DNA from: Iphione sp. A-MEVVRFRX5
Lineage: Eukaryota
Assembly (NCBI GenBank): GCA_976226885.1
Contig: OZ320321.1
Location: 23,374,001-23,438,000, forward strand
Length of the DNA stretch: 64,000 nt
Reading direction: 5' to 3'
Shown: piece by piece, positions 9,847-55,559 of the stretch
Layout of the letters: each line of letters opens with the position of its first letter
How positions within the stretch are numbered: the stretch's first letter is position 1
The notes under the pieces: model-generated
Told to the model about the DNA's origin: nothing
The model's database searches: none
What the model saw: only the letters and a program-made list of their open reading frames with translations
Made by a program: the position numbers and the translations under genes

Positions 9847-10977
9847 GTAATTGTTTTTTTCATTAACTGATTGATTTTTTTTGGAGATAAAAATTCAGAC
9901 TCTTGTTAAGAAAGAAATATATAACAAATTTTTTGGAAAAAAAAAGAATTACTAATCTCTTATTAAGAAAGAAGAATTACTAATAGGAAAAATTTTTTTG
10001 GGTGTCCAGTTTGAGTGAGAACTCTGCGGACCAGATTTATTTGCAGCTATCCCTGACGTGTGTAACGAAGGATGGAGAGACAGCCAGATTTGCAGCTATC
10101 CCTGACGTGTGTAACGAAGGATGGAGAGCCAGGCCCTTGAAGATGTTCTTTATTTTTTCAAGCACGAAAAAAAACAAGAAGCGAAAGATAATTCAGGTGA
10201 TAATTTTTTTCAGCTTTCAACTAACATGTTAAGAAAAAAACAGACGTTAATTTATCTACTTTGAAACTAAATATAATTTGATTTACTCAGTTATTAAAAA
10301 TTCTTGAATAAGTAGTTACACAACCTTATTCCAAAAAAAAATTGACTGAAATAATAAAAGGACAGTTGACTTAGAAAATATTTTTTTTTCCAGAACAAAT
10401 GATGTTTGTGCTCAAGTGACGATGTCGACAACGATGCTGAATAGAAGACTGGTCAACAGCTCGCTCTTTTCCACATTAGTTTCAGATAGAGGTAGTTTTT
10501 TCAGTTTGAAACATTTTTTTCTTTTTGAAATTTTTTTTCTTTTGTTATTTCATTGTGTTCTCAACATTTTTTTGTTTCTTAGGACATTTGTAGACTTATC
10601 AGAAAAAAAGAAATAACATTTTTTTTCATAGGTTTTTTTATTGAAGAGAAATCAAAACTAAGATTTTTTTTCAAGCAAGTCTAAACAATCAGTATGTACT
10701 GTTAAAATACAGATGATTATTTGTAAAAGGAAACAAACAAGTAAGAACAAATCAGCACATATGATTCAAGAAATAAGGAAGAAAAACTACTCTAGTTCAT
10801 TTAGATAGATAGATAGATGACTAATGATCTTACTCATTGAACATGAAAGCAAGACGCATGTTAAACTTTTTCTTGTCATTGAACGTGCACACTTTGACGT
10901 GTAATGATTCTAGACATAGGAAAACTTTCTTCTAATCAGCGCACACAGAAGACTTTTGAATAAACGTTTTTTCGTCT

Positions 10978-12941: not shown

Positions 12942-13610
12942 TCACCTTTTTATTTCCCGAAGAACTTTTTTAGGATCTGGAGATGAAAAGAGATCCATCA
13001 TAGCCTGCTCTACGTAAATATTCCACTCCATATGAACACTTCGGTCGATGATTCCATAAACAAATCGACCAGATTCATTCACACACACATCTTCTTTAAT
13101 TTTTGATATAAGATGTTTTGGAATGGGGAGTTTTTTTAGATTCTGAATTACTTTTGACATTTTCGTAAACTCAGTATGCCATGGATGAATTACACTCCAA
13201 TCAAATGCAGCATCTTCGCTTTCTGAATCGGATTCTTCTGAATTTTCAACCATCCACATCTGTCCCACCACAGAGAGAGCAGAAAGATGGAATAAGCTCA
13301 ACTTTTGATGAAACATAGCCTTGCGCATTTTTCTCATGCTATACAGAAAAAGACTCATAATTTCAAGCAGTCTGTCATCAAGTTCCTTGAGTTCTTGCTC
13401 AATGTATTGGTCTGGTGAAATTACAACAACTAAATCATTTCTCCCCTCTTCTCGTAAAAAGTCATCCAATGTAAAGGGAATCCGCTTAAAACGATTTTCT
13501 ATGTGTGAAAGAAAGATAGTTGGTTCAGTCCTTTCTTCGCTTTCAATGAAGGGATCGTAAGCAGTAAGCTTATAGTTCTTTCCAACTCGAAGAGTTTGAA
13601 GAAGCTCCAT
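12942..13610 (-). CDS. Hypothetical protein (222 aa) with an acidic SEESDSESED patch
   Basis: Long uninterrupted ORF with complex composition inside the Maverick; no recognisable domain. Confidence 0.65.
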   Translation of the reverse strand: MELLQTLRVGKNYKLTAYDPFIESEERTEPTIFLSHIENRFKRIPFTLDDFLREEGRNDLVVVISPDQYIEQELKELDDRLLEIMSLFLYSMRKMRKAMFHQKLSLFHLSALSVVGQMWMVENSEESDSESEDAAFDWSVIHPWHTEFTKMSKVIQNLKKLPIPKHLISKIKEDVCVNESGRFVYGIIDRSVHMEWNIYVEQAMMDLFSSPDPKKVLREIKR

Positions 13611-13793
13611 GATGAACCAATAGATGGAAAAACTGAAAAAAGGGACAAAAAACTATTAAAATTAAACTTTAAAAAAATATTCACAATTGCAAAAAAAAAA
13701 AAAAAAAAAGAGAAATGAATTATGAATACAACTTACCACTTTCTCGATCCGATGATAAGTCACTAGTGATGGAACGACAGCTGACAAATTCAA

Positions 13794-14019
13794 GGCGCCC
13801 TCTATTAATACAGGTTAACAAAGAGACAGAAATAGGCGCCATCTATTATCTTAAAAGCTGGTTAACATTGGTTCAGAAATAGGTGCGCCATCTAACTTTT
13901 TTCGTTAATGATTCATTCAAAGAAGGCGCCATCTTTTATCTATTTGAGAACTGAACAACAATATTAGTTAAGATTCGTCATTATTCAATATATTTTAGTT
14001 AAGATTCGTCATTATTCAA
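13794..14019 (-). promoter_or_regulatory. Putative promoter: 3-4 copies of GGCGCCATCT (AGATGGCGCC on minus, YY1-like) plus a 25-bp direct repeat
   Basis: Copies near 13794, 13835, 13885 and 13925; TTAGTTAAGATTCGTCATTATTCAA at 13964-13988 and 13995-14019; lies upstream of minus-strand gene 13610. Confidence 0.4.
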
Positions 14020-14159
14020 ACTATTAAGATCATTCTTTTTCAATTAAACAAGATATATTTTAAATAAAAAAGACAACACTTTTTTCAATTATTGCATTTT
14101 ATTTCATCATAAACATTGAAAAATATTTCGTTTGACATAAACATTTTTTTTTTTGCATC

Positions 14160-14702
14160 TCAAACAAAAGAATCCTTTAGTTCTTTAACACTCTTAGCAA
14201 CTTTGATTATATCACGTAGCACAGTAACAAAGAATTCTCTTTGACGCGTCGGTTTAGATAATGAAGAATTAAAAGCACATTCTGGTGCAAACTTCAAATG
14301 TTCAATGTGTGGAGTATCCGAAGACTCCCAGGAATGAAGACAAAGTCCGCAATGAAAGCATTGTACAGTTCCTGCTCCTATATAGAAGAAACCACTCTGA
14401 ACCAGTTCTTCTATGTCAATCAAACCGCTCCATCCTGCGAACGTCTGACGGCGAACCTCTTTATCTTTGAACTTGGGAAATGCTGGTACATTGCAACGTG
14501 ATTTCGGATTAACATACAATGGTCGAATGGTTGCTGTGTTCCTTTCCAACGAACAAGCAAAAGGTCTGTTACCGCTCGGTACAAACCCGGAATCAGTCTC
14601 AATACACCCGGAATCAGTCTCAATACACCCGGAATCGGACTCAATACATGAATCAGCTTGAATAGATCCATCGACAGCGGAATAATCTCTCTCCTCAGAC
14701 AT
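14160..14702 (-). CDS. Single-BIR inhibitor-of-apoptosis (IAP)-like protein, no RING
   Basis: RRQTF..W...GFFYIG..VQCFHC-x16-H-x6-C gives exact BIR Zn-ligand spacing; likely start MSEERDY at 14702; TATAAAAG at 14803-14796. Confidence 0.92.
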   Translation of the reverse strand: MSEERDYSAVDGSIQADSCIESDSGCIETDSGCIETDSGFVPSGNRPFACSLERNTATIRPLYVNPKSRCNVPAFPKFKDKEVRRQTFAGWSGLIDIEELVQSGFFYIGAGTVQCFHCGLCLHSWESSDTPHIEHLKFAPECAFNSSLSKPTRQREFFVTVLRDIIKVAKSVKELKDSFV

Positions 14703-14870
14703 TGTAAATGAATAAAATCGTGAAGATGAAGAAAAAACTGCTTTTCTCTCCAACCTCTGTGAAACGAATGTGCTAAATCTGACACAATTGTATGACTTTT
14801 ATAGTCTGGACATAGGAGAAACGATATTACACAATAGCTAGAAACAAATTTACTTCCAATAAAATGAATA

Positions 14871-14943
14871 TACCTAGACACGGGTTCGAACCGTGAACCT
14901 TCAGAACTTCAGTCTGACGCTCTCCCAATTGAGCTATCTAGGT
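14871..14943 (-). tRNA. tRNA-Phe (anticodon GAA) encoded inside the Maverick
   Basis: ACCTAGA-TA-GCTC-AATTGGGA-GAGC-G-TCAGA-CTGAAGT-TCTGA-AGGTT-CACGG-TTCGAAC-CCGTG-TCTAGGT-A: 73 nt, all four stems fully Watson-Crick paired, A and B boxes intact, GAA at 14910-14908, TTTT Pol III terminator 7 nt downstream (14864-14861). Confidence 0.9.
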
Positions 14944-15176
14944 TCTGTTTCATTTTTTCAAACATACAAGCCATACACAAATTAGAAAACATTTTCCTGA
15001 TTTCGTTCAAACTGGCTGATACACGTATTGCAACACTTCGTATCAACATGCTAACTGAAATACGAATTGCACCACATTGTAACAAAAAATGAAACACATA
15101 TTGCTCCACGAATTTGCTTTACTTCGTCACTGAGATATGTATTGCATTACTTCATAGGCAAGCAATGACAAAAGCA

Positions 15177-15360
15177 GGCTGACAGGTGTTGCAATACTTC
15201 GTAAGCAGCCAATCACAGAACAAGCTGACAGGTGTTGCAATACTTCGTAAGCATCCAATCATCGAACAGGCTGACAGGTGTTGCAATACTTTGAAACCAA
15301 CCAATCACAGAACAGGCTGATCGGTGTTGCAATACTTTGAAAGCAACCAATCACAGAACA
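15177..15360. repeat. Subterminal tandem array, 46-bp unit x4 (GGCTGACAGGTGTTGCAATACTTCGTAAGCAGCCAATCACAGAACA) with degenerate flanking copies
   Basis: Units start at 15177, 15223, 15269 and 15315; probably part of the Maverick terminal inverted repeat. Confidence 0.9.
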
Positions 15361-16560
15361 GATTGATTGCATAACTTTGAAAACGACGAATCACAGACTG
15401 TGACGTCACAGAGGTCACGGCTCAGCCAATCAGGAGAAACTTTTCGCGACCCCTTACCCCACTATACTACTACTCACTACCTGCGTTTTCCTGGAAAATT
15501 TGCAAAAGCACACGTTAAGCTGAGATGAAACAATCTTCCCGAGCAATTTGTCATCTTCTCATAGTAGACCCCTCAGATCTAAGGCTTCATAATTAAGAAG
15601 ACTTGAGTTTCACAATATCGTGTCATACACAACCCCAGCATGAAAAGTGCTTTCGCTGCAGTTTAGAGCGTTTGACACCCAAACCCCTATTGTGCGGACC
15701 ATGAGAGGACTTCAAAGGCCACTGCTTTTAACTTTTTCCACAAAGCAAACGTAGTTTTGAAACTGATTGAACACATAGATGCTTTGAACCCATATTCTGT
15801 TCCTGTACTCTGTCCTTTTTTATGAGATAGTAGGAAGGGTGTAACGTACTCAAGCTGCTTGTTTAACTGATCATCGCATGATCAGATTTAAGTGGGTGGA
15901 TGATATAAAGGTACTCGAGATACAGGTAGCATGCTTGCACCATCTGTGTGCTGGGATGTGGACCTGGATGGGGATACTGAAGTCTGCGGCACAATATTTT
16001 GTTGTCATAGGCATGAGTAAGGTTTTCTGCACTGTACTTTTTGTAGGGTTAGTTTGTGTGTATGACTGACTTTGTCCAAGCTAACAAACTCTAAACGAAA
16101 CGAGTTCAATTCGGTGAGATGCGGTGTTTACACGTGTCCCTGTGTGATGAGACCTATTCCTGCATGTGCACAAGCATCTATGTGGTAAAATATGTCTAAG
16201 TTTTGTCAGTTATATTATTATATCCAATAGTACAGCGCATAGCCACGTCAAATTCCATACGTTTTATCAGTGGTATGATCTTGTGGTCAGATATCTGTGC
16301 CTGTATATTGACTTATGTTGCAGGGTGCTGCCAGATTGCCCCCCCTGTCATGAATATGTATGTATACATCAGATAAGATGCCATTGGAGCAATGATCCTC
16401 ATCGCAAGATGCACTTCTCCCGAATCCTTTTTATTAACAACTGAAAACATGTCGCTATGTACAGTCATTCAAACCATGTATAAACGGTCTTGTGCTCTTA
16501 ACTTTGTGGGCATTTCTGGCGGTTGTACTAGATCATTTAGCCACTTTTATAATATATATA

Positions 16561-17039: not shown

Positions 17040-18635
17040 GTGTTCTCCTGGTTCTCTAGGATTCATTCTGTCAACGTGTCAGTGTCGGGGCCCATGCTAT
17101 GTACCAGAGCGAAAGCAGTAGCTAAGGAACTTGGCATGAATGATTTTAAGGCATCCTCTGGATGGCTGACCAGGTTCAAGAAGCGCCATTGCATTGGTGC
17201 CTTCAAGGTTGTGGGCAAACGTGCTGCCATCAACGAGGCAGCAGTGGAGACGTGGCTTGAGAAACTACCCACGGTCCTGAAGGGCTACTCACCAAGGGAC
17301 ATTTTCAATGTGGATGAGTCTGGTCTCTTCTATTAAGCACTGCCAGATCATACCCTTAGTGTCAGGGGGTCCAACGTCTCAGCCCACAAGAAATCTAAGG
17401 AGCGGATCACTGCTATGTTCTGTGTTAACGCCTTGGAGAATTCCAAAAGACTCTGGTAATCAGCAAAGTGGCTAAGCCCAGGTGTTAGTAGAACGTGAAG
17501 GATCTGAATTCACTCCCTGTCGTATGGCGAAGTAACAAAGGGGCGTGGATGACGACAGTCCTATTCGAAGAGTGGCTGCAGGGATTTAACAGAAAGATGT
17601 GTGCTCAGGGTCATCAGGTCTGCCTGATAATGGATAACGCCCCATCACACCTAGGAGGCTTGAAATTATCCAATGTCAAGGTTGTCTTTCTTCCACCAAA
17701 TGCCACTTCTGTTCTCCAGCCCTTGGACCAAGGAATAATTCAAGCAGTGAAACTCCAGTACAGGAAATCATTCCTGGAATATGTTGTGTCCAGGCTTGAT
17801 GAACAAGACCCCAAGGCAGCAGTGGCTTTGGTGGACATGCAGCTAGTGGTCAACTGGCTGAATGCTGCTGTGAAGTCAGTGAAGCCCACCATTGTGGAGG
17901 GCTGCTTCATTAGGTCTGGTATCAGACCAGTTCCAGATGATGAGGATAAACTGACATCCCCACCACAGCTTGATGATGAACCTCTTCTGACATTGCTCCA
18001 AAAGATCCAAGAGGGCATTCCAGATGAATCCAGGATGACATCTGATGAATACCAGGCCATGGATGAAGATGTCCCGACTGAAAGTCCTGATGAAGAAGAC
18101 TGGGCAGAGGATGAGAAGGAGGAGCAGGAAGAGGTGGAGGTGGAGGTGGAGGTGGAGAAGTCTGAGATCACAGACTCAGAAGTCCAGGAGATGTTCCAGA
18201 AACTGAAGAAACATTTCCTAGTCAAAGGAGACATGGACTGTATTGACTTATTGGCTCCCTTGCAGCAGTGCCATGCATCCAAATCCATTGCCAGGAAAGT
18301 TGTTCAACCCACCATATCAAGTTTCTTCAAGAAGTAAATTCTCTGTTGTGATGTATTTTTTGTGTGCTGAATATTTATTTATTGCTGAATAAAATATCTA
18401 AACTAATGCTGGTATTGTGCTTTGGTCAGTTTAGCATTTGTAGAGAGAGAGGGAGAAAGGGATTTCATTTTCTAGTTTGACCCCTCCTTACGTCTGTACA
18501 TGTATATCATTTGTAGAGAGAGAGAGAGAAAGGGATTTCATTTTCTAGTTTGACCCCGTCTCCAATGTGGACGTGCCTCTAATACGGATGATTTGAAGCA
18601 GAACGGAGGGTGTCTTGAATGGAGAGAGTGTACTG
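17040..18635 (+). pseudogene. Decayed pogo/Tigger-like DD30D transposon, 5' truncated
   Basis: CENP-B-type HTH (GPML...A..LG..DFKASSGWL.RFKKRH), FNVDESGLFY, MDNAPSH-x-QPLDQG with 30 residues between the last two Asp. Stop at 17334, frameshift near 17430, TAG TAG before 17495; acidic C-terminus; candidate right TIR ending GTACTG-TA at 18635. Confidence 0.88.
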
Positions 18636-41442: not shown

Positions 41443-44085
41443 CTAAGATGTGGGGTCTCGTGACTTGACAAATTGATAGATAGGTGCATCTATCAGGTTG
41501 AGGCCATGCGGGATAAAACTCTGTAGGCGGAACATCCATTTTCTTTCTATTAAGTTCCTAAGTTCTTCAGCTCTAATGCTTTCCGAATTCACGTAGATGA
41601 AATCCCCAATGTGTATTTCAACATCATTCAGTCCACAGTGAGTACCGGAGTTAAAATGTGCGCCGATGTCACTGTCTAGGAGTGGTTTGGTGATTTTGTA
41701 GAAGTGATCCTGGGATCTATCCATGACCATTCGTTTTGTTTGTCCCACATATTGTTGGTGACATTCTTTGCATGTAATGCAGTATATTAGATTGGAGCTC
41801 TGGCAGTTCACGTTGTATTTCGCTGTGTACCTTTTCTTAGTTACTGAGGAGGTTATCTCTCCGGTAGTGTTGATCTTGGTGCAATATCTGCAATTCTGTC
41901 TTTCACATGCTTTCAGTGCTCTGCCCTGTATGGCTGCCCTGTGTTTATCCGCTGTATTACTTTCAGGACTGTACCTTATTTTTGCTCTTACTAGCATTTC
42001 TCTGAGGTTCTTTGGGCGTTTCAGGCCAATTATCAGTTGGCTACTGCTAAGCGATCTGTTCGCATTTGATCTCGATAGGATGTTCCAATTTGCTCGCACT
42101 GTTCTGGAGAGGTTGTTGAAGGTAGGATGATAGGTAGTGACTAATATAGTCTTTTTGTCATCGTCTTCTTTGCTCTCAGTGTTCTGTAGCAGCATTGGTC
42201 TGTCTTTCTGACAGCTTCGAATGTAGCTGTCACACAATAAATCTTGTGGATAGCCTCTCCGTTGAAAGTGGATAGATTTCTTCAAACACTCTCTTGTGAA
42301 ATCTGAGTCTTTGGAACATATTTGCCTGATTCGGAGGAATTGACCATATGGTATCCCTCTTGTACAGTGTGGTGGATGGACTGATTCGTAACGCAGGTAA
42401 TTGTGTACATCAGTTTCTTTGTTGTACAGTGCGGTCCATAGTTGGTCATTCTTATGGTGGACTGTGACATCTAGGAAATTTACTGATTGATGTGATATTT
42501 CCTTGCTGAACTTTATATTGGGATGGACTTCATTCAGGTGGCAGACGAAGTGGTTTAGCTTCTCCTTGCCTGCGTTCCAGATGACAAATATGTCATCTAT
42601 GAACCTTAGCCATACTACTGGTTGTGTGTCCCAGGAGTATACATATCTTTCTTCAAACCATGCCATGAAGATGTTCGTGAATGTTGGGGCCACTCTAGTC
42701 CCCATCACTGTACCTCCTACTTGTAAGTAGTGCACACCATTGAATTCGAAATTGTTACATTTTGGAACTAATTGTAGCATTTCGATAATCAATTGATTTT
42801 GGGGGATGTTTGTGTTTGGCATTGGATTTCGTCTATGCCTCAGCAACCATGTTCCCACTGCTCGCTTGCCTTCCTCGTTTGGTATGTTTGTATACAGGGA
42901 GGTTACATCAAGAGTGCAGAGAATTGAATCCTTCTTGATTTTGTTCTTTGTTTTCTCTAGGATTTCTAGGAAGTGGGTGCTGTCCCTAACATAGGATGGG
43001 ATCAATGGGACTAGAGGTCAAAGTAGGATGTCCACTAGTCCAGATAGTTTCTCGGTTGCGCAGCCGTTTGCTGAGACTATTGGTCATCCAGGTGGTGGGT
43101 GACCAATTTTGTGTATTTTGGCCAGAAGGTAGAAACATGGTGTACGGACTGTATCCGTTATTACAAGTTTCATCACTTTTTCTGATAATTCCCCATTTCG
43201 GAATAGTATGGTTACCAGATTGTTGGCTTTCATGGTGAATTTTTCAGTCTTGTCTGTGTCCATTTTCTTAGAGAATTTGGAGTCAGACAGCTGTCTTATG
43301 CCTTCTTCTAGATATGTGGTGGTGTCCATTACCACTACGGCACCCCCCTTGTCTGCGGGTTTGATTATTATGTCCTTATTGGACCTGAGGTTCCTAACAG
43401 CTTGTTTCTCTCCCTTTGACAGATTACAAGTATGGGGGGCGATAATTGTACTGTTCGACAGGTGTATTTCATTCATAGTAATGAATGTTTCTAGGTTTAT
43501 GTTGCCCAATGGGGCCTTGCGGTTGGTGTTCTTCTTGAAGGGTTTGTTCAAGATAATTTTGCTGTCAAATGATGTGTCGGAATTGCCGGAGTCTTGGAAG
43601 AAGTGCTTCCACCTTATTTTTTCATGGAATCTGTCAAGATCTGCAAATTTCTCAGATAACTCTGGTTCTCCCGGTGTGGGGCAAAATTGTAAACCCTTGT
43701 TTAGCACTTCCAATTCATCATGTGTCAGCACATGGCTAGAGATATTAACAACATTAGATTTTTCTGTTAATGACAATTTATTCAACAAGGTCATAAACGT
43801 CTCTCTCTCTTGGATGAACGGAATGTTCAGCCAATTATCATCTATAACAGCATTGTTGTTAGTGTTAGTAAAGTCAGGACAACATTCAGAATATTTGTTA
43901 GGTGGGGAGTCCACATTCCGGGCGACATGAATGTCAAAACTGGATGTGTCTGGGGATGTCAGATTGTCAGTCCCCAGATGATTCTCACAAGGACATATGT
44001 CCGCGTGATGGCTATCTGTACCTAATATGGTACCTGGCGGGTTAACATAATGTTTCACATATGGAAAGCCTTGATGAGGGCCCAT
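41443..44085 (-). pseudogene. PLE reverse transcriptase + GIY-YIG endonuclease: one reading frame with two premature TGA codons (43086-43084, 43020-43018)
   Basis: IIIKPADKGGAVVV, KIHK..PPG*PIVS, LDVTSLYTNIP, GT.MG, LRFIDDIF, C-x4-C-x2-C linker, NLIYCITC..C..QYVGQT. ORFs 43084-44085 and 41443-43005 are in the same frame. Confidence 0.93.
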
Positions 44086-45169
44086 TCCCTCTTGCTCAGG
44101 CCTCTCGGACCATCTTCGCGGTGGTTGTCCGGTACGTCCCTTCCCTTGTTCTCCTGGTACTTGTTGTTCCTGGGACGGCTTGGAGAGCGGTCCCGTCTCT
44201 GAGCCTGTTGTTTCTTCTTGGACGGCCCAGGTTGTTCCTCAGACGATTGTCGCTTGGTTGCCCGGGCTTGGCGGAAATTCTGATTATTCTTCTTCTTAGA
44301 ATTATCGCCAGATGACCTGTCTTGTGTGTTTGATGTGTTTGGTTCATCGGGTTCTTCCTCCTCAGCTGATCTGGGGGGATTTTGGCGACTTGGTTGATAT
44401 GCCCCCAGCCCTGTTCAGTCAGTTGTCTCTGGCTCAGGAACTGAAGGCGCTTGTTTAGGCTGTGGATCAGAGTTGCTTTAGCCTTTCCTACCCAAGTGGC
44501 AGTTACTCCTACTGCTGGGTCCATGGCTTCAGGGGTGGTCCCGCAAACGCGTTCGGTGGCCTGTAGGTAGATGTCATGATTTTCGATCACCATGTTGGCT
44601 TTCTTCAGCCTGTAGCCCAAAGTCGCCCATTGCAGTTGGAGAGTGTGCATCTTCCTCATGTCAGCTGGTTCCTTCATGAGTTCTGGTTCATCCTCAAAGT
44701 AGCTGGGCATCTCGCCGATGCCGGATGCCCACGGAGTGGTGATACCTTGGTTGCTGATTTGGTTGTACCATGCACCCCGAATTTGGCATTTGGTACCATA
44801 CAGTAGTTGCTGGTGTGACTTCTTCCACATGTCTTCAGCAGCCTGTGGTAGTCATGACCGGTTGTCCTCGTTTTCCTGAAAAGTAATAGAACGAGGAGTT
44901 TTATTGTTGGGGTCATCTATTGATCGGCATGTGATCGTGAAGGGACCCTTGGGTGTCCTGTGTTCAGGGTTAGTGAATCCCGCAGTACCTGAAATGTTCA
45001 GATTTTTAAACCTATTGGACATAGTTATTTCGGTACTGTCTATGTGGGTCAGTTTGTCACAATTAATCACCTGACTAAAAGTTGGTTTTAGTAGGTTAGA
45101 CAAATCAATGTTATCAGGTTTTCTCCCTGTGTCTGTTGGGGCTAAGGGAGGAAACTCTTGGTCGTTCAT
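44055..45169 (-). pseudogene. PLE upstream ORF1-like gene (~370 aa) with one TGA (44854) and one frameshift near 44410
   Basis: MNDQEFPPL start; ORFs 44852-45247 and 44096-44830 are in frame; helical NHDIYL..P segment. After a frame switch it reads ...AEEEEPDEPN...RRDRSPSRPR...GLSKREWALIKAFHM* ending at 44055, in a frame different from the RT ORF. Confidence 0.55.
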
Positions 45170-48972: not shown

Positions 48973-50439
48973 TTACTATTATGACAGTTTTCCCCACCAG
49001 GAGACGCATGGTGCTGAGTCGCCACTCCGGACCCCCTCCCTTCCGGACAATTTTGCGCATTCCGCTACCCCTCCGGTTAGGGGGGGGCCGACGGTATATC
49101 AATGCCACTGTCGCCATAATCCTATTCCATTAAATATTAATTCACAGTTGATCAAAATAAGACGTTGTAAAATTTTGTTCTTGTAGTTTCACAAAGAAAA
49201 TACCCAATTGGATCAATTTAAGAATTATTGCACGGACTGGCATCATGTCTGCTGTTCATGCACGTACTCAGAGAGGAAGGGGAAGTACTTTTAAACATAA
49301 ACCTCGGGAAAATTCTATCAGAGCAAGATCGAATTACGGAAGCATGGATCATGTTAAACAAACGGGATAGAAGATTGGAAACACAAAGGATTTACAGCCT
49401 TGAATTACCGTTTCAGGTATTAGTATACATTATGTAATGCCTGACATTCAAGATACCATTGTTCCTTTAGACTTACGTGTAAACAAGAAAACGGGTAATT
49501 AATTAAATATCTCGCGCGGATAACTATATATCATATTGCATTTGATGCTTGCGTCATTCAAAATGTCATTGTAGATTAATCTCTGTGTATGTGTGGGGGG
49601 AGGGAAGGCGGGGGGGGGGGGTAATAATGAAGGTAATTAATCAAAATTCTTACACAATGGTATTTGATTTAGGTCCACCTTTAACTTACCGCCTTCTGTA
49701 AGAGGAGCTACCGTGGCGTGGCCGTGTCTATCATGGAGAACGTATATCTGTCACAGGTGTCGTCTCGGCTGAAAAGTCCAAGGTCACCACTAATTCTCCT
49801 CGTGAAGGGTTTGAACGCCTTCAAAGGGCGGACGCGAGAAAGCAATGACAAGCACCTGGGTGTAACTGTAGGACGGAGGCGTCGAGTTCGATACAGGCAC
49901 TAGAAGAGAGAGAGGATGAAGAGGTTGACGCCCACAACAACAACCGTATCTTGGGCAACAAACAAGGGTGGACTTACCCAACAAGGTACGATATATTTCG
50001 AATGTAGGACATGGGATAAGTCAAAGGTTAAAGAAACGTTTATTCTGAAAGTCGGAAGATATTGTAGTGGAGACATGCCGGAAGAAGTACATCTTCCTAA
50101 AAGAAGTACATCTTCCAAAAGAAATATATTATCTTTTACAGATAAGAATTATTATCACAAAGTAACCAAAGAAAATGAGAAATAAATTGTATATAATTCT
50201 GAATAATGTTTTATTCTTAAGAAACGTATTTAACCGAAAATGTTCTTGGAAAATCTGGTTCCCACTTAAATAGGGGGGAGTGTTGCAGGGACTGCCCACT
50301 ATCCACAAGTCCCCTATCACATGGTTGGAGTGTAAGATAAGAATATAGAAGAGCGCGGAGCTACGTCACACCTGTGGGCAATGGAGCGGAACCGCTGAAA
50401 GCAAACACCTTGGGCTCTATATTGCCTATAGATAGGCAT

Positions 50440-51120
50440 GGAGTTCTGTGTATAGATGTGTGTATGGATGTGTATAGGTGTGTCTATAGATAAGTGTGTA
50501 GTTGTGTGTATGAATGTATGTATGGATATGTATACATGTATGTGTCTTTGTTATGTTTAAATGCATGTATGGATGTGGGTAGATGTGTCTTTGATATGTG
50601 AGTACTTGTGTGTATAGATGTGCTGTATGGATATGTCTAGGTGTATGTGTTTATAAATATGTTTGTAGTTGTGTGTATAGATGTATGTATAGATATGTGT
50701 AGGTGTATCTGTCTATACATATGTGTGTACATGTGTGTATAGATGTGTGTATGCATATGTGTACATGTATCTGTCTATACATATATGTGTAGTTGTGTTT
50801 ATAGATGTGTGCATGGATGTGTGTGTGCATATATATAGGTGTATCTGTCTATACATGTGTGTATACTTGTGTTTATAGATGTGTATATGGATGTGTTTGT
50901 GCATATGTGTAGGTGTATCTGTCTATAGTTATGTGTCTATAGATGTGTATAGGTGTGTGTATGGATGTAAGCAGGTTGTGTCTTTTTAATGTCTATAGAT
51001 ATGCATCTAGTTGTGCATAATATATGTGTGTATGGGTGTGTGTATGTGTATCTATATTTGATATGTGTGTGTTGTTTGTATAGATGTGTGTGGTTGTGTG
51101 AATAGATGTGTCTATAGATG
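50440..51120. repeat. Degenerate TG/TA-rich array (GTGTATAGATGTGTGTATGGAT-like) in the DIRS 5' region
   Basis: Direct reading; similar array at 55200-55555. Confidence 0.9.
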
Positions 51121-51257
51121 AGGGGGTACCGTGGCGCGGTAGCTAGTTATCTCCATTGACGCTAGGGGCCAACCCATATTTAGATCGCTGCACTCGCTTG
51201 GCGCCCCAGTCTAGCTACTGTCGCCACGCACCGAAAGTCGAGTCGAGTCCAGCTATC

Positions 51258-52232
51258 ATGGCTGAGAAGGACAGCGACGAAGAAACCAAGGCAATTTTCT
51301 TGGAAATTATGAAGCGAATGAAAGGCATAGAAGTGAGACTAGATGCCATGGAGGGGAAGAAATCCAAGGAAGACCCGAAGGGCAAGACGAAACCGAATGT
51401 TGTTACAAGGCTGGCATCCAAAATGGCTGCCGCGGCGACACAGTCAGCCGGTGCGGTGACTAACTTGGACGAGGCGGTCATAACAGAGGGCGACAACACA
51501 CCAGAGCAACAAGACTTCCCTATGCCTGAGGAATTACGTGCCCTGGCAGAAGAAAATATGGAGAGTATAATAAAGACTCTCTATCCAGACACCATCGAAG
51601 CCAAAGGTAAGGCTAAGAAAATCACCCTGGCGACATATGTGTACCAGGGCTCAGAGAAGCCCGAGATTGACCAACTGTCTTTCTACCAGTATTTGCTAGG
51701 CTTGCTGAAGATGATATCTGACCCTAAGCTCCCCTCCCATATCAGTAAGGACGATTTACTGGACCATATGAAAGACTTGGTGGGGGAAGCAGCAGCAGTT
51801 CCATGGGCCCCCCTTCAGAGATGGGTAGGGGAGCTTTGGGATGATGTAGCAACAAAAAGAATCAGCATGTCCGATAGTCAAAAGGTGCAGCAGCTAAAGG
51901 GAAAAGCAATGCATGAACATTGGCAGATAGCAGGGCGGGAATCGCCATGCATTCAGCTCCCATGTCCCGCCTGGCTACAGGGAAAATGTAAGAAGGACTC
52001 CCCACATGTCCACGCAGACCTCGTGATGTTCCATGGCTGTCCAGTGTGTTTTTTCTTATTTAATAAGACTTTGGACCACCGAACTGATGTGTGTCGGCAG
52101 AAGAAGAGGGTGCTGAAGGACGACCGAGAGAGGAAGCCATGGCAGGATCAGCAGCCGCAGCCACAGCGCCAAGCGAGGAGGACAGACAATTCCTGGCAGG
52201 GATCCTGGCAGAACAACCCCTCCTCCAGCTAG
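51258..52232 (+). CDS. gag-like protein of the YR retrotransposon
   Basis: Intact ORF (ATG 51258 in ORF 51156-52232); C-terminal CPAW..GKC...H...CPVC...H...C Cys/His cluster typical of DIRS/Ngaro gag. Confidence 0.8.
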   Translation: MAEKDSDEETKAIFLEIMKRMKGIEVRLDAMEGKKSKEDPKGKTKPNVVTRLASKMAAAATQSAGAVTNLDEAVITEGDNTPEQQDFPMPEELRALAEENMESIIKTLYPDTIEAKGKAKKITLATYVYQGSEKPEIDQLSFYQYLLGLLKMISDPKLPSHISKDDLLDHMKDLVGEAAAVPWAPLQRWVGELWDDVATKRISMSDSQKVQQLKGKAMHEHWQIAGRESPCIQLPCPAWLQGKCKKDSPHVHADLVMFHGCPVCFFLFNKTLDHRTDVCRQKKRVLKDDRERKPWQDQQPQPQRQARRTDNSWQGSWQNNPSSS

Positions 52233-54044
52233 ATATTGAGTCTACAGACGATCCAGCACAAGACACCCCGGTCGACCATAATGTCTCTAATTTTTCTATT
52301 TTTTCCAGGCCTCCTCCGATGATTGATTGTTATGTGATTAGGGTGCATACTGAGTGGCCAGAGCCAGTGGCCGAGTGCCCACCACTACTGAGAGAAATAT
52401 ATTCACAGGTGAAATCGTCGGGTCGGCATAATATGTCTGAGTGCCGTTTGACCCTCCCCACCAACCTGAACCTGGCCGCATGGGCCGACTTACTGCCACT
52501 TAACTCCCTATGCAATTCATTTCTGCTAGACTGCCTTAAATATGGTTTCCCCATAGGGATTCAGGGTACCCCGGCCCCCTTCTGCCTAAAGTCCAACTTT
52601 CCAACCGCAGAGGCCTATGCCCAACATATCCAGGATTACATACACACTGAGTCGAAGGATGGTGCGTTAGTTGGCCCCTTTCCCACTCCAATTTTTTCCT
52701 GGTCAGTAACTAGCCCTATCCTTACTAGACCTAAGGATGGGGGACGTAAGAGAAGGATCATAGTGGACCTCTCCTTCTCTGGAGTTAACAGTCTAATCCC
52801 TGAGCACGACTATTATGGCCTCCCAGTTTTCCTGCGTCTGCCTGCCACTCACAACCTCGCAGCTGTGATCTCCACTCTGCCCTCACCTTTATATCTCTTC
52901 TCAGTTGACTTCTAGAGCCTATAGGCACTTTAACATTGACCCACTGTACTGGCCCTTCTCCTAGATTTTGTATGACTCACACTACTACTTTGATCTCAGG
53001 CTCCCATTCGGGACGCGCTATAGTTCACTCTTGGTTCAACTGTTGTCAGAAAAAATAATCCACCACGTCTTGCATGTATTTGAAGGGCTCAAGTCGTTTG
53101 CCTACTTAGATGATTATGTATTCATGAGTAATCAGCGCGACACCGCTGATCAAGCATATGCTTACATTGTCGACTTGCTGTTGTCGCTGGACTTGCCACC
53201 AGCAGTTAATAAGTGTGTCCCCCCAACACACTTGTTGACCTGGCTGGGTATTACATTCGATACTAAAGAAATGAAAATGTCAATTCCCCAGATGAAGGTA
53301 ACCAAGACATTGGTGATGGTTAGGAAGATACTGGGCTTGCCATGCGTCTCATATAAATGTTTGCAGAGACTGCTTGGTCTAATTAATTTCGTGGCTAAGT
53401 GTGTAAGGCCAGCTCGCCTGTTTGTTGGCAGAATATTAGATAGATATCGAGAATGTGTATCGCAGAACTACCAAAATGTTCCTTTAACTGACAATATGCG
53501 CGCAGATCTAAGGTGGTTTGTTAATTTCTTATCTAGATACAATGGTATCTCCTGCATGCCTGTTGGTCCAATAATGGACACTTTGTATTGTGACGCATGT
53601 TTACAGGGGTTAGGCGCATATTCATCAAAATATTATTACTACAGCAAAGCCCCTCCTTGCCTAGCAGGTAGATCAATTGCCGAAATTGAAGCACTGAATG
53701 TATCACTAGCGGTGCATACCATTGTCCCCTTGTACCCACCTGGATCAAGTTTCATCGTGTTTTGTGATAACATAGCTTCTGTTCAGGTGTTTGCCTCAGG
53801 ACGAGGAAAAGATCTGTATATTCTGAAAGCAGCTCGGTCCATATGGTTTGTCCAGGCCCAGCACGATGCTACATTGTATTTCCAGCATAGAGAGGGAGCG
53901 AAGATGGTATACGCTGACGCCTTAAGTAGATATTATTTGGCGCCAAAGTATGTTAATATTGTACGCCGGTTCTTGGCCGAAAACCCTACTATTGTGCATC
54001 TGCGAGTTAATGAGAAGAAAATCCAGAAGATTCTCATGTATTAG
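52139..54044 (+). pseudogene. DIRS-type pol (RT + RNase H) interrupted by a frameshift and stop at ~52910-52965
   Basis: RRIIVDLSF, D..RAYRHF.IDP..WP (shifted frame), LPFG, AYLDDY, WLGITFD; RNase H CDAC..GLG, I...EALN, VFCDN, ADALSR. Confidence 0.92.
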
Positions 54045-54145
54045 GTCTCTATGTTACAGACGACAGGCTGGGCCCTCTAGCCAGAGCAGCCGCGCGGGCC
54101 CAGAGGAGTGCTGTCACCGAGTCATCCCGCACAGCGAGGCTAAGG

Positions 54146-55018
54146 ATGTTCAAACTGTATATGGGTTTCTGTAGGTATTATTCAATCAACTGGGCATCTA
54201 TTGCCGTCAGCGACATTCTAATATTTGTGGAATATTTAGCCCTGTTTTACAATAACCCACAGACTTTGCATCAGTTCGTCTCGGCCATCAGGCTAGTTCT
54301 TCAGTTGCTGCAGAAACAACACGACACCTGGGATGACCCTAGGGTCAAGGCGGCCCTCAAGTCCCACGACAAGAACTCCACTCACCTGGCCGACAGGAAG
54401 CTGCCGATCTCGCCAGGACATCTCACATGTATGGTAAACCTGCTGGAGAACATGGGCGCAGTAGGGACAGTGATGAAAGCCCTTTATTTGTTTATGTACC
54501 ACTCACTTCTACGACAAAGCAATATATTGGTGAAATCCCATACAGCATTCGACCCGTCAAAATTGTTACTCATCGGAGACCTTGACTTTCAAGCGGACGG
54601 TTGTAACGTTACTGTCAAGTGGGCGAAGACCGTTTCCAAGAGGTCTCCTGTCAATATCTTTGTGCCCAAAACCGATAATTGTCTGTGTCCGATCAAAGCT
54701 ATTCACGATATGTACGCCCTGTTCCAGGATAATCATAAGAGTAACCCAGTCTTTAGGGATCCGGTGCTTGCCCTGCCCATCACGACAATGAAGGCAGCAA
54801 ATGTTTTGACTATCCTTAACAGAGCTCTAGGCCTCCCTACTAATGCATACTCTCTGCATAGTTTACGCAGAGGCGGAGCCACAGCCCTGCAGTTCCTAGG
54901 TGCCCACGAAGACGGTATCATGGCACAGGGAACGTGGAAGTCTAAGTCTGCTTATCAGATATACACATCCAGGTACCTGGCTGCTCATAAAGCAGCTGAG
55001 AAACTCAAAATGCTATGA
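54146..55018 (+). CDS. Tyrosine recombinase; the frame is open from 54014, upstream of the first ATG
   Basis: LLRQSN (catalytic R), HSLRRGGAT (HxxR), GTWKS and AYQIY (catalytic Y); no lesions. Confidence 0.93.
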   Translation: MFKLYMGFCRYYSINWASIAVSDILIFVEYLALFYNNPQTLHQFVSAIRLVLQLLQKQHDTWDDPRVKAALKSHDKNSTHLADRKLPISPGHLTCMVNLLENMGAVGTVMKALYLFMYHSLLRQSNILVKSHTAFDPSKLLLIGDLDFQADGCNVTVKWAKTVSKRSPVNIFVPKTDNCLCPIKAIHDMYALFQDNHKSNPVFRDPVLALPITTMKAANVLTILNRALGLPTNAYSLHSLRRGGATALQFLGAHEDGIMAQGTWKSKSAYQIYTSRYLAAHKAAEKLKML

Positions 55019-55199: not shown

Positions 55200-55559
55200 G
55201 TGTTGTGTTGAGATAATGTGTGTCAGTCTGTATATAGATGTGTGTATGGGTGTGTGTCGGTTTATGTGTCTATACATATATGTGCAGTTGTGTGTAATAG
55301 ATGTGTATTTGGATGTGTATTGCTGTATGCACCTTTGTGTGGTTTATAAATATATTTGTAGTTGTGTGAATGGATGTGTATTGGTGTATGCACCTTTGTG
55401 TGGTGCATAGATATGTGTGTAGTTGTGTGTATAGATGTGAGTTTGGATGTGTACTGGTGTATGCAACATTTCTGTGGTGTATATATATAGTTATATGTAT
55501 ACATGTGTGCATGGATGTGTATTGGTGTATGCAACCTTTTTGTGGTCTATAGATATACA

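What the first reader, a model, noticed from the sequence alone, without database searches (positions are those of the whole stretch)
14583..14663. Tandem IETD-SG repeats ahead of the BIR: procaspase-3 activation-site mimic or beta-TrCP degron array
Seen: IQAD-S-C-IESD-SG-C-IETD-SG-C-IETD-SG-FVPS, built from 21-bp repeats. Established: IETD|SG is the site at which initiator caspases and granzyme B activate vertebrate procaspase-3, and IETD is the standard caspase-8 substrate. DSG-x2-4-S/T is also the beta-TrCP phosphodegron (IkB, p105) mimicked by Vpu, A49 and NSP1. Inference: a bait-plus-inhibitor IAP, either decoying initiator caspases (cleavage would expose an SG N-terminus next to a BIR) or sequestering beta-TrCP to damp NF-kB. 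I know of no IAP described with this design.
Basis: partly seen in the sequence, partly recalled or inferred. Interest (0 to 1): 0.85.

Follow-up and report, generated by a model that had tools for sequence, protein, structure and literature searches.

The report
Caspase-site repeat array in a Maverick-borne IAP
A small cell-death-inhibitor gene, apparently carried by a virus-like mobile element in an animal genome, begins with four tandem copies of a short motif, three of which match letter for letter the sites where human cell-death enzymes caspase-7 and caspase-3 are switched on; this suggests a decoy for the enzymes that do the switching, but nothing has been tested.

Summary
On the minus strand, 14583-14663 encodes four tandem units (one of 18 bp, three of 21 bp) at residues 14-40 of a 180-aa protein (CDS 14160-14702). 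The protein has a single BIR, no RING and no intron. It contains only one Met, so the array must be translated if the BIR is. The array lies in a leader predicted to be disordered, ahead of a confident BIR fold that best matches XIAP-BIR3.

Unit 1 reads IQAD|S, the human procaspase-7 linker site. Units 3 and 4 read IETD|S, the procaspase-3 site. Ile, Asp and Ser are invariant in all four units; P3 and P2 vary.

The gene sits about 10 kb downstream of an intact integrase, double-jelly-roll capsid gene and adenain-like protease, which form a Maverick/Polinton (adintovirus-like) module. IAP homologues are already reported in such elements.

None of the 150 best hits listed, out of 5485 BIR relatives, carries the array, so conservation cannot be judged. 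The host clade is unresolved.

My best reading is a multivalent pseudosubstrate for apical caspases, tethered to an IBM-groove BIR. IAPs whose caspase cleavage matters to function (DIAP1, DIAP2, Livin) are known, so this is a new variant rather than a new kind. The beta-TrCP reading is weaker.

The parts
14160..14702 (-). Coding sequence of a 180-aa, single-BIR, RING-less IAP-like protein. It is a single exon and contains only one Met.
   Evidence: ORF list. Translation and Met count. Pfam BIR, E = 4e-15. PDB sequence hits to NAIP and XIAP BIRs. AF2 model mea483708ede8.
14583..14663 (-). The finding: four tandem units at residues 14-40, reading IQADSC / IESDSGC / IETDSGC / IETDSGF. Each presents an I-x-x-D|S site.
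   Evidence: TRF period 21, 3.0 copies, 95% matches. Codon-level unit table. pLDDT below 50 and no secondary structure. Site identities taken from papers.
14271..14453 (-). BIR domain, Pfam match at residues 84-144. The confident fold spans about residues 70-150. The Zn-ligand pattern C-x2-C-x16-H-x6-C lies at residues 115-142.
   Evidence: Foldseek best matches are XIAP-BIR3, ILP-2 BIR and DIAP1-BIR2, with target TM-scores mostly 0.78-0.90.
14166..14252 (-). Predicted C-terminal alpha-helix, residues 151-179. No RING follows it.
   Evidence: DSSP on the AF2 model, block-mean pLDDT 73-84. Pfam finds no domain other than BIR.
14796..14803 (-). TATA box (TATAAAAG), 101 nt upstream of the ATG. 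There is no ATG between it and the start codon, and position -3 is A.
   Evidence: Sequence read. Position scan.
14098..14103 (-). AATAAA polyadenylation signal, 57 nt after the stop codon.
742..1854 (+). Maverick/Polinton-type integrase: rve catalytic core plus a C-terminal chromodomain. The ORF is intact.
   Evidence: Pfam rve 1.6e-09 and Chromo 1.2e-07. 191 relatives, the best at 54-58% identity over 98-99% of the query.
2545..3903 (+). Double-jelly-roll major capsid protein. The ORF is intact.
   Evidence: 14 relatives, 26-50% identity. AF2 pLDDT 78.7, pTM 0.80. Foldseek top hits are the Sputnik, mavirus and PBCV-1 capsid proteins, E about 1e-15.
3884..4366 (+). Probable adenain-like cysteine protease.
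   Evidence: Weak Pfam Peptidase_C5 hit, E = 0.004, below the curated cut-off. An HW motif and a Q-x6-CG motif are present.
14871..14943 (-). tRNA-Phe(GAA) gene, 68 bp upstream of the BIR gene's TATA box. It marks roughly where dense ORF packing ends. Whether it lies inside or outside the element is unknown.
   Evidence: ARAGORN. Rfam tRNA, 68.1 bits.

Best explanation
The stretch is a translated tandem repeat in the disordered, acidic N-terminal leader of a small RING-less single-BIR IAP. The gene is compact and intronless. It lies at the accessory end of what is most likely an endogenous Maverick/Polinton (adintovirus-like) element in an animal genome. The four units present consecutive I-x-x-D|S sites. 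IQAD|S and IETD|S are letter-for-letter the sites at which apical caspases and granzyme B cut human procaspase-7 and procaspase-3.

Proposed mechanism: the leader is a multivalent pseudosubstrate. It offers the host's apical caspases the same sites they must cut in the executioner zymogens, and so competes with those zymogens. The adjoining XIAP-BIR3 / DIAP1-BIR2-like BIR, whose groove anchors are retained, holds the caspase or the cleaved product. A cut at the last site leaves an N-terminus beginning Ser-Gly, like the SGVD end of the caspase-3 small subunit, which binds XIAP BIR2.

Shown: the repeat, its translation, the exact motifs, the predicted disorder, the BIR fold and the virus-like neighbourhood.

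Inferred: that caspases cut or bind the array, that the BIR docks on a caspase, that the gene is expressed, and that it belongs to the element.
For: The repeat and peptide are confirmed.

The protein has only one Met. The TATA box lies at -101 with no intervening ATG, position -3 is A, and AATAAA follows the stop. The array is therefore necessarily part of any BIR-containing product.

Residues 1-65 have pLDDT below 50 and no secondary structure. The BIR has pLDDT above 90.

IETD175-S176 is the procaspase-3 linker site and IQAD198-S199 the procaspase-7 linker site. Both are I-x-x-D motifs cut by granzyme B and apical caspases (PMC11442631; PMC2199091).

Across the four units Ile, Asp and Ser never change. 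Five of the seven nucleotide differences fall in the P3/P2 codons (binomial P = 0.023), and the one change in the Ser codon is synonymous.

No such site array occurs in the 150 best BIR relatives.

The best structural matches are XIAP-BIR3, including its caspase-9 complex 1nw9, and DIAP1-BIR2.

By Zn-ligand spacing, the equivalents of the XIAP BIR2 groove residues Leu207, Trp210, Asp214 and Glu219 are L, W, D and E in this protein.

There is precedent for cleaved IAPs and for suicide substrates: DIAP2, DIAP1, Livin and P35/P49.

IAP homologues are already reported in adintoviruses (PMC8502044).
Against: No relative carrying the array was found, so there is no conservation evidence. The word-index search was blank. 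The full HMMER search gave BIR-only matches. The exact protein is absent from the collection.

Units 3 and 4 differ by one nucleotide, so the duplication is recent, and only seven substitutions carry the 'selection' signal.

The site identities are with human caspases, and the host is unknown. The closest named integrase relatives are from bivalves. CpG o/e is about 0.6. The nearest BIR relatives are a mix of frog, shrimp, scallop and mite proteins.

There is no expression evidence.

Whether the gene belongs to the element is not proven, because the left end lies outside the window and no terminal repeats were identified.

The two BIR2/BIR3 selectivity positions are Phe and Ala here, unlike either XIAP domain.

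The leader is about 45 residues from the BIR core, which is longer than a rigid two-site clamp would suggest.
Confidence: 0.4

Rival explanations
1. Cleavage-operated switch rather than decoy. The leader masks or regulates the BIR, and caspase cleavage at one of the four sites then switches the protein on (as for DIAP1 after Asp20) or converts it to a different activity (as for Livin at Asp52). The array simply gives several chances to be cut.
For: DIAP1's N-terminal peptide occupies the BIR1 groove until drICE cuts after Asp20 (PMC3972657). Livin is cut at Asp52 and keeps its BIR, but with changed activity (PMC4069184). In this protein the leader is acidic (net charge -8 over 60 residues), disordered and ahead of the BIR. 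The neo-N-terminus begins Ser-Gly, like the IBM-type SGVD end of caspase-3 that binds XIAP BIR2.
Against: DIAP1 and Livin are cut by effector caspases. The sites here have the I-x-x-D form of the apical-caspase/granzyme B sites in procaspase-3 and -7. A switch needs one site, not four. AF2 gives no hint that the leader docks on the BIR, since pLDDT is below 50 throughout.
Confidence: 0.2
2. Neutral slippage product. A 21-bp unit in a low-complexity Ser/Asp/Glu-rich leader expanded recently by replication slippage, and the match to caspase sites is coincidence.
For: Units 3 and 4 differ by one base and unit 2 by two. The neighbouring genes of the same region are also full of coding tandem repeats (families D5-D10, D16 and D18 in 6900-9770). 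No relative carries the array. The statistical signal rests on seven substitutions.
Against: The unit matches two different executioner-procaspase sites exactly, and it does so in a protein whose only domain belongs to the caspase-regulating family. The pentapeptide expectation is under 1e-6 per position. The chance that the diverged unit reads Q-A at its two free positions is about 3e-3. No I-[E/Q]-x-D-S occurs in 106,226 residues of BIR relatives. Ile, Asp and Ser are untouched while P3 and P2 changed.
Confidence: 0.25
3. beta-TrCP phosphodegron array. The D-S-G-x(2-4)-S/T motifs recruit the SCF-beta-TrCP ligase, either to control the protein's own stability or to soak up beta-TrCP and damp NF-kB signalling.
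For: The pattern occurs three times, at residues 22-28, 29-35 and 36-42 (which gives the Ser positions as 23, 30 and 37). The region is disordered and Ser/Thr/acidic-rich. The motif definition is the one quoted in the finding.
Against: D-S-G follows automatically from a D|SG caspase site. Unit 1 has lost the Gly, which the degron needs, but keeps Ile and Asp. The degron does not explain the invariant Ile. The pattern is loose, and 5 of 150 BIR relatives have it somewhere. My lead that the procaspase-3 linker is itself a beta-TrCP site was not borne out. The review I could read places recognition in the first 38 residues, and the primary paper is not held.
Confidence: 0.08
4. Silent relic. The gene is a copy in a dead endogenous element (or an orphan host ORF) that is never expressed, so the array has no present function.
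For: The locus sits in repeat-rich DNA among pogo-type, reverse-transcriptase and tyrosine-recombinase elements. The exact protein is in no collection. There are no expression data.
Against: The ORF is intact, with all four Zn ligands, a TATA box, a purine at -3 and a polyadenylation signal. The integrase and capsid genes align over 98-99% of their length with relatives and show no breaks. This points to a young element.
Confidence: 0.12

Closest known systems
Drosophila DIAP2, a mechanism-based (pseudosubstrate) IAP
   Same: It is an IAP that presents a caspase cleavage site as bait and uses a BIR to hold the caspase. Cleavage at Asp100 is required for binding and inhibiting drICE (PMC2373516).
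   Different: DIAP2 has three BIRs and a RING, one site rather than an array, and targets an effector caspase. Here there is one BIR, no RING, and four tandem I-x-x-D|S sites of the apical-caspase/granzyme B type. Sequence relatedness does not extend outside the BIR.
Drosophila DIAP1 (cleaved after Asp20) and human Livin/BIRC7 (cleaved at Asp52)
   Same: Both have a caspase site in an N-terminal leader ahead of a BIR, and cleavage changes the IAP's activity (PMC3972657; PMC4069184). A frog BIRC7 is the single closest BIR found, at 48% identity.
   Different: Both have single sites cut by effector caspases, and both carry a RING. The array here copies the executioner-zymogen activation sites and is repeated.
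XIAP BIR2 and BIR3
   Same: The predicted fold matches XIAP-BIR3 best. The groove residues that anchor an IBM N-terminus appear conserved. XIAP BIR2 binds the SGVD neo-N-terminus that the IETD|S cut creates on caspase-3 (PMC3760131). Cutting the last unit here would leave an N-terminus that also begins Ser-Gly.
   Different: This protein has no RING, no UBA and no other BIRs. The two selectivity positions (His223/Trp323 and Phe224/Tyr324 in XIAP) are Phe and Ala here. Only about 30% identity.
Baculovirus P35 / P49 suicide-substrate caspase inhibitors
   Same: They are virus-borne proteins that offer a caspase site as bait. The P49 site (TVTD'G) is needed to block an initiator-type insect caspase (PMC3252740).
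   Different: The fold is unrelated, with a structured reactive-site loop and a covalent trap. In the sequence searches this protein matched only BIR-containing entries: Pfam gave BIR alone and the PDB sequence search gave BIR proteins only. Its sites lie in a disordered leader.
IAP homologues of adintoviruses / Mavericks and of large invertebrate DNA viruses
   Same: IAP and Bcl2 homologues are reported among adintovirus accessory genes (PMC8502044). Foldseek finds BIR proteins of baculoviruses, entomopoxviruses, iridoviruses, nudiviruses and mollusc herpesviruses. The neighbourhood here is a Maverick-type integrase, capsid and protease module.
   Different: No tandem caspase-site leader is mentioned in the passages I read. 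I did not see the sequences of those adintovirus IAPs.

Membership tests
IAP / BIR-domain proteins (Pfam PF00653) | BIR fold with the C-x2-C-x16-H-x6-C zinc ligands | tested here: met
   Pfam E = 4e-15, 56.5 bits against a cut-off of 22.9. The ligand pattern lies at residues 115-142. AF2 pLDDT is above 90 over the domain. Foldseek matches XIAP-BIR3 with target TM-scores mostly 0.78-0.90.
IAP / BIR-domain proteins (type II, IBM-binding) | Peptide-binding groove residues, equivalent to XIAP BIR2 Leu207, Trp210, Asp214 and Glu219 | tested here: inconclusive
   By invariant ligand spacing the equivalents are L122, W125, D129 and E134. Positions 223 and 224 are F138 and A139 (residue names from PMC3760131). 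The numbering anchor (His ligand = 220) is from my own knowledge, and I had no residue-level alignment to XIAP BIR2.
RING-type E3 IAPs (XIAP, cIAP, DIAP1/2, Livin) | C-terminal RING finger | tested here: not met
   The protein ends at residue 180 after a predicted helix. Pfam finds only BIR. No obvious splice donor was seen near the stop when I read the sequence.
Maverick / Polinton (adintovirus-like) element | Retrovirus-like rve integrase, here with a chromodomain | tested here: met
   Pfam rve and Chromo. 191 relatives of similar length.
Maverick / Polinton (adintovirus-like) element | Double-jelly-roll major capsid protein | tested here: met
   AF2 pTM 0.80. Foldseek hits Sputnik, mavirus and PBCV-1 capsid proteins at E about 1e-15, probability 1.00.
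Maverick / Polinton (adintovirus-like) element | Adenain-like maturation protease | tested here: inconclusive
   Peptidase_C5 at E = 0.004, 17.3 bits, below the 21.3 cut-off. An HW motif and a Q-x6-CG motif are present.
Maverick / Polinton (adintovirus-like) element | Protein-primed B-family DNA polymerase, packaging ATPase, terminal inverted repeats with target-site duplication | not testable with these tools
   None was found in the window. The element runs off the left edge, and no informative inverted repeat was found. Whether the BIR gene lies inside the element therefore rests on continuous dense, intronless ORF packing up to about 14.8 kb. Fetching related loci was left out (see referred steps).
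Mimic of the procaspase-3 / procaspase-7 interdomain linker | P4-P1' identity with IETD|S and IQAD|S | tested here: met
   The window sequence was compared with the sites printed in PMC11442631 and PMC2199091.
Mimic of the procaspase-3 / procaspase-7 interdomain linker | Descent from a caspase gene (capture) rather than convergence | tested here: not met
   No caspase family or chain was returned by Pfam, by the PDB sequence search with the whole protein, or by the search with the 27-residue array at E <= 10. The likeness is confined to 5-6 residues per unit.
Mimic of the procaspase-3 / procaspase-7 interdomain linker | The same sites in the host's own executioner caspases | not testable with these tools
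   The host was not identified.
Suicide-substrate caspase inhibitors (P35/P49, CrmA, DIAP2-type) | Cleavage required for inhibition, with a stable or covalent complex | not testable with these tools
   Only the presence of candidate sites in an exposed region can be shown.
beta-TrCP phosphodegron | D-S-G-x(2-4)-S/T in a disordered region | tested here: met
   Three matches. The region is disordered.
beta-TrCP phosphodegron | The degron's core residues are the conserved ones across units | tested here: not met
   Gly is missing from unit 1. The invariant residues are Ile, Asp and Ser.

The most novel reading that the evidence does not exclude
A virus-like mobile element of animals carries a minimal IAP whose leader is a tandem 'zymogen mimic'. 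It holds copies of both executioner-procaspase activation sites (caspase-7-type and caspase-3-type) strung ahead of an IBM-groove BIR. The protein acts as a multivalent decoy and trap for apical caspases. This would be a way of blocking the step between initiator and executioner that is not described for any IAP.
Probability: 0.3. Interest if true: 0.75.

Novelty: new variant of a known kind. Interest (0 to 1): 0.58.

Why it matters
If the array is functional, it shows a virus-like element converging on substrate mimicry of the exact step at which the death signal passes from initiator to executioner caspases. It would do so with a minimal BIR-only protein rather than a P35/CrmA-type fold.

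The combination would be a third way for an IAP to handle caspases, beside groove docking (XIAP, DIAP1) and single-site pseudosubstrate trapping (DIAP2). It would also add a concrete host-interaction gene to Mavericks/adintoviruses, whose biology is almost unknown.

If the host proves to be an invertebrate, exact human-type procaspase-3 and -7 sites there would also speak to how old those activation sites are.

If the array is only a slippage product, the locus is an ordinary Maverick-borne IAP, which is a known kind of accessory gene.

Tried and rejected
- **Word-index search, whole protein.** 50 candidates, none significant.
- **Exact-sequence look-ups.** The BIR protein, three neighbouring ORFs and two retroelement ORFs are all absent from the collection. 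The genome is probably not in the collection, and the host could not be named.
- **Full HMMER search against 1.84 billion representatives.** 5485 hits. The leftmost local BLASTP alignment among the 150 listed starts at query residue 32 and extends from the BIR, and no local alignment covers the array as a whole.
- **PDB sequence search with the 27-residue array alone, E <= 10.** No hits. A caspase did not come back as a relative.
- **P0154.** It appeared to have two I/L/V-[E/Q]-x-D sites 7 residues apart, but they lie inside its BIR1 fold. Rejected as a parallel.
- **Survivin-like architecture** (one BIR plus a long C-terminal helix). Considered, but all 50 top structural matches are XIAP-BIR3, ILP-2 or DIAP1-BIR2.
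- **Procaspase-3 linker as a beta-TrCP site.** The review I could read places recognition in the first 38 residues, and the primary paper is not held. Dropped.
- **Pfam and PHROGs on the neighbouring ORFs.** Nothing beyond integrase, weak protease, DDE_1, RVT_1 and a weak phage-integrase hit.
- **Rfam.** Only the tRNA.
- **Whole-window repeat search for terminal inverted repeats.** Only microsatellite pairs.
- **Host clade.** BIR relatives are mixed (frog, bird, shrimp, scallop, mite, sea slug). Named integrase relatives are bivalves, but only at 34-41% identity. CpG o/e is about 0.6. Unresolved.
- **Literature search for IQAD in non-mammalian caspases.** Nothing useful.
Full report
**1. The observation**

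The finding lies on the minus strand. The ORF at 14160-14753 has its first ATG at 14702 and gives a 180-aa protein. Residues 14-40 (window 14663-14583) read IQADSC / IESDSGC / IETDSGC / IETDSGF, followed by VPS.

Tandem Repeats Finder reports period 21, 3.0 copies and 95% matches at 14585-14648. The IQADSC unit is an 18-bp diverged copy in register, lacking the Gly codon. The window contains no N. At 63-81 bp the repeat is too short to be an assembly artefact.

**2. Is the array translated?**

- The protein contains a single Met. No downstream in-frame start can give a BIR without the array.
- TATAAAAG lies at 14796-14803, 101 nt upstream of the ATG. No ATG lies between them. Position -3 is A.
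- AATAAA follows 57 nt after the stop.
- The ORF is continuous. I saw no splice signals that would remove the array.
Expression itself remains unshown.

**3. The protein**

- Pfam finds one domain, BIR (E = 4e-15), at residues 84-144 in numbering from the ATG.
- The zinc-ligand pattern C-x2-C-x16-H-x6-C is intact at residues 115-142.
- PDB sequence hits are NAIP BIR2/3, XIAP BIR3, cIAP, Livin and DIAP1.
- An AlphaFold2 model built on 15 sequences gives pLDDT below 50 and no secondary structure for residues 1-65. The BIR core scores above 90, and a helix spans residues 151-179.
- Foldseek places the model closest to XIAP-BIR3 (target TM-scores mostly 0.78-0.90, rmsd mostly 1.6-2.4 A), including its complex with caspase-9. 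ILP-2 and DIAP1-BIR2 follow.
- There is no RING.

PMC3760131 names the XIAP BIR2 groove residues. Using those names and the invariant ligand spacing, the equivalents of Leu207, Trp210, Asp214 and Glu219 are L, W, D and E here. The two positions that distinguish BIR2 from BIR3 are F and A. The numbering anchor is from my own knowledge, so I rate this inconclusive but favourable for a peptide-binding (type II) BIR.

**4.

PMC11442631 and PMC2199091 print the human sites. Procaspase-3 is cut by caspases-8/-9/-10 at IETD175-S176. Procaspase-7 has IQAD198-S199 in the same interdomain position. Both are I-x-x-D motifs that granzyme B also cuts.

The array therefore contains the caspase-7-type site once, the caspase-3-type site twice, and an intermediate (IESD|S) once.

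Across the four units the codons for Ile, Asp and Ser carry no amino-acid change. Five of the seven nucleotide differences fall in the P3 and P2 codons (6 of 21 positions; binomial P = 0.023). The single change in the Ser codon is synonymous. That is the pattern expected if P4, P1 and P1' matter. It rests on very few events in recently duplicated units, and I treat it as suggestive only.

As a background check I scanned the 150 best BIR relatives (106,226 residues). They contain no IETD, no IQADS and no I-[E/Q]-x-D-S. Only one has two loose sites within 30 residues, and those lie inside a BIR fold.

**5. Neighbourhood**

Upstream in the window lie three genes on the plus strand:
- An intact rve integrase with a chromodomain at 742-1854.
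- A 452-aa protein at 2545-3903. Its AF2 model (pTM 0.80) matches the double-jelly-roll capsid proteins of Sputnik, mavirus and PBCV-1 at E about 1e-15.
- A probable adenain-like protease at 3884-4366 (weak Pfam hit; HW and Q-x6-CG motifs).

This is the integrase and morphogenesis module of a Maverick/Polinton (adintovirus-like) element, and it runs off the left edge of the window. Integrase, capsid and BIR genes show no breaks (0 stops, 0 frameshifts detected). Integrase and capsid align over 98-99% of their length with relatives. The other ORFs cannot be judged.

Dense, intronless ORFs continue to about 14.8 kb. Beyond that lie a tRNA-Phe gene, a 46-bp tandem array, and then ORF-poor DNA. 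That DNA holds a pogo-type transposase and reverse-transcriptase and tyrosine-recombinase elements.

I infer that the BIR gene is cargo at the accessory end of the element. I could not prove it, because polymerase, ATPase and terminal repeats are not in the window. The adintovirus paper states that IAP and Bcl2 homologues occur among adintovirus genes (PMC8502044). A Maverick-borne IAP as such is therefore a known kind.

**6. Relatives and host**

- No relative carrying the array was found.
- The closest BIR is a frog BIRC7 at 48% identity. Shrimp, scallop, mite, bivalve and sea-slug IAPs follow at 35-45%.
- The best integrase relatives (54-58%) are unnamed contigs. The named ones are from pearl oyster and rock oyster at 34-41%.
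- CpG observed/expected in the flanks is about 0.6.
- The host clade is unresolved. An invertebrate, perhaps a mollusc, or a fish would both fit.

This matters because the site identities above are with human caspases.

**7. Mechanism**

I commit to the following reading. The leader is a multivalent pseudosubstrate addressed to the host's apical caspases, tethered to a BIR that can hold a caspase or a neo-N-terminus.

Precedents:
- DIAP2 is a cleaved pseudosubstrate that traps drICE (PMC2373516).
- DIAP1 is cut after Asp20 to free its BIR1 groove (PMC3972657).
- Livin is cut at Asp52 and keeps its BIR (PMC4069184).
- P35 and P49 are viral suicide substrates, and the P49 site sets its specificity for an initiator-type caspase (PMC3252740).
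- The IETD|S cut on caspase-3 creates the SGVD end that binds XIAP BIR2 (PMC3760131). A cut at the last unit here would likewise leave an N-terminus beginning Ser-Gly.

What is shown: the repeat, its obligatory translation, the exact motifs, the predicted disorder, the BIR fold and the virus-like context.

What is inferred: cleavage or binding by caspases, docking by the BIR, expression, and cargo status.

Rivals are a cleavage-operated switch, a neutral slippage product, a beta-TrCP degron array and a silent relic. The beta-TrCP reading is the weakest:
- Its D-S-G follows automatically from D|SG.
- Unit 1 lacks the Gly.
- It does not explain the invariant Ile.
- The pattern is loose.

**8. 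Novelty**

What I found described nowhere in the passages I could read is a tandem array. Nor did I find one made of executioner-zymogen activation sites, in a RING-less single-BIR protein of a virus-like element. I class it as a new variant of a known kind. Interest is moderate to high, tempered by the lack of any conservation or expression evidence.

**9. Limits and a slip**

I did not fetch the DNA of related Maverick loci, by look-up or by pattern. This is listed as a referred step.

Slip: in my private reasoning I recalled from memory short stretches of the human caspase-3 linker and of XIAP BIR3, some textbook beta-TrCP degron examples, and short caspase-site motifs (cleavage sites recalled for DIAP1, Livin, XIAP and drICE/Sf-caspase-1, a few IBM tetrapeptides, optimal-substrate tetrapeptides). 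I stopped and put none of these letters into any tool call. None is used as evidence. Every motif of another protein quoted in this report is as printed in a cited paper or in the finding itself.

Noticed in passing
window 15142-15410: A 46-bp tandem array of about 4.8 copies at 87% identity. Each unit carries a CCAAT-box-like CCAATCA. The array is followed at about 15397-15406 by a palindromic GTGACGTCAC (CRE-like) and another CCAAT. It looks like an enhancer/promoter block, or possibly part of the element's terminus. It lies just beyond the tRNA-Phe gene.
   Followed up: partly
window 13794-13934: Four minus-strand copies of AGATGGCGCC (one mismatch or none), spaced about 40-50 bp apart. They lie between the BIR gene's 3' end and the next gene's start. 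Including one overlapping plus-strand match there are 5 matches against 1.28 expected, and no shuffle reached 5. This is probably a promoter element of the 12942-13610 gene. The core resembles a YY1-type ATGGCG site (my knowledge).
   Followed up: partly
window 13630-13740 (minus strand): A GGTAAGT donor-like site near 13735 and a long T-tract ending in CAG near 13632, just upstream of the ATG at 13610. Together they suggest a short 5'-UTR intron in the neighbouring 222-aa gene.
   Followed up: no
window 6568-9870 (+): A 1100-aa ORF rich in Pro, Ser and Thr (mucin-like), built from several families of coding tandem repeats with periods of 45, 54, 93 and 102 bp. GC skew is strongly negative (-0.35). 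There is no Pfam hit. Antisense ORFs over it are probably artefacts of the repeats.
   Followed up: no
window 4476-5177 (-) and 5500-6216 (+): Two divergently oriented small ORFs. By eye each has a Cys-rich N-terminal part and one clear hydrophobic membrane-spanning stretch. The second also has a signal-peptide-like start. They are possible paralogous type I membrane proteins. Neither has a family hit.
   Followed up: no
window 2259-2561 (+): A 100-aa ORF between the integrase and the capsid gene with an extremely basic Lys/Arg-rich C-terminal half. It overlaps the preceding ORF by 4 nt. It could be a DNA-condensing core protein of the element.
   Followed up: no
window 14871-14943 (-): A tRNA-Phe(GAA) gene only 68 bp upstream of the BIR gene's TATA box. 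Whether it marks the integration site, is carried by the element, or is coincidental is unknown.
   Followed up: no
window 51156-55018 (+), flanked by 50420-51130 and 55216-55540: A run of ORFs with reverse transcriptase and a weak tyrosine-recombinase (phage-integrase) hit, which suggests a DIRS-like retroelement. It is bracketed on both sides by related TG/TA-rich minisatellites (families D2, D3 and D14).
   Followed up: no
window 17495-18337 (+) and 41443-44830 (-): A pogo-type DDE_1 transposase fragment (E = 5.7e-29) and a second reverse-transcriptase element. These show that the window is repeat-rich animal-type chromosomal DNA and not a free virus genome.
   Followed up: partly
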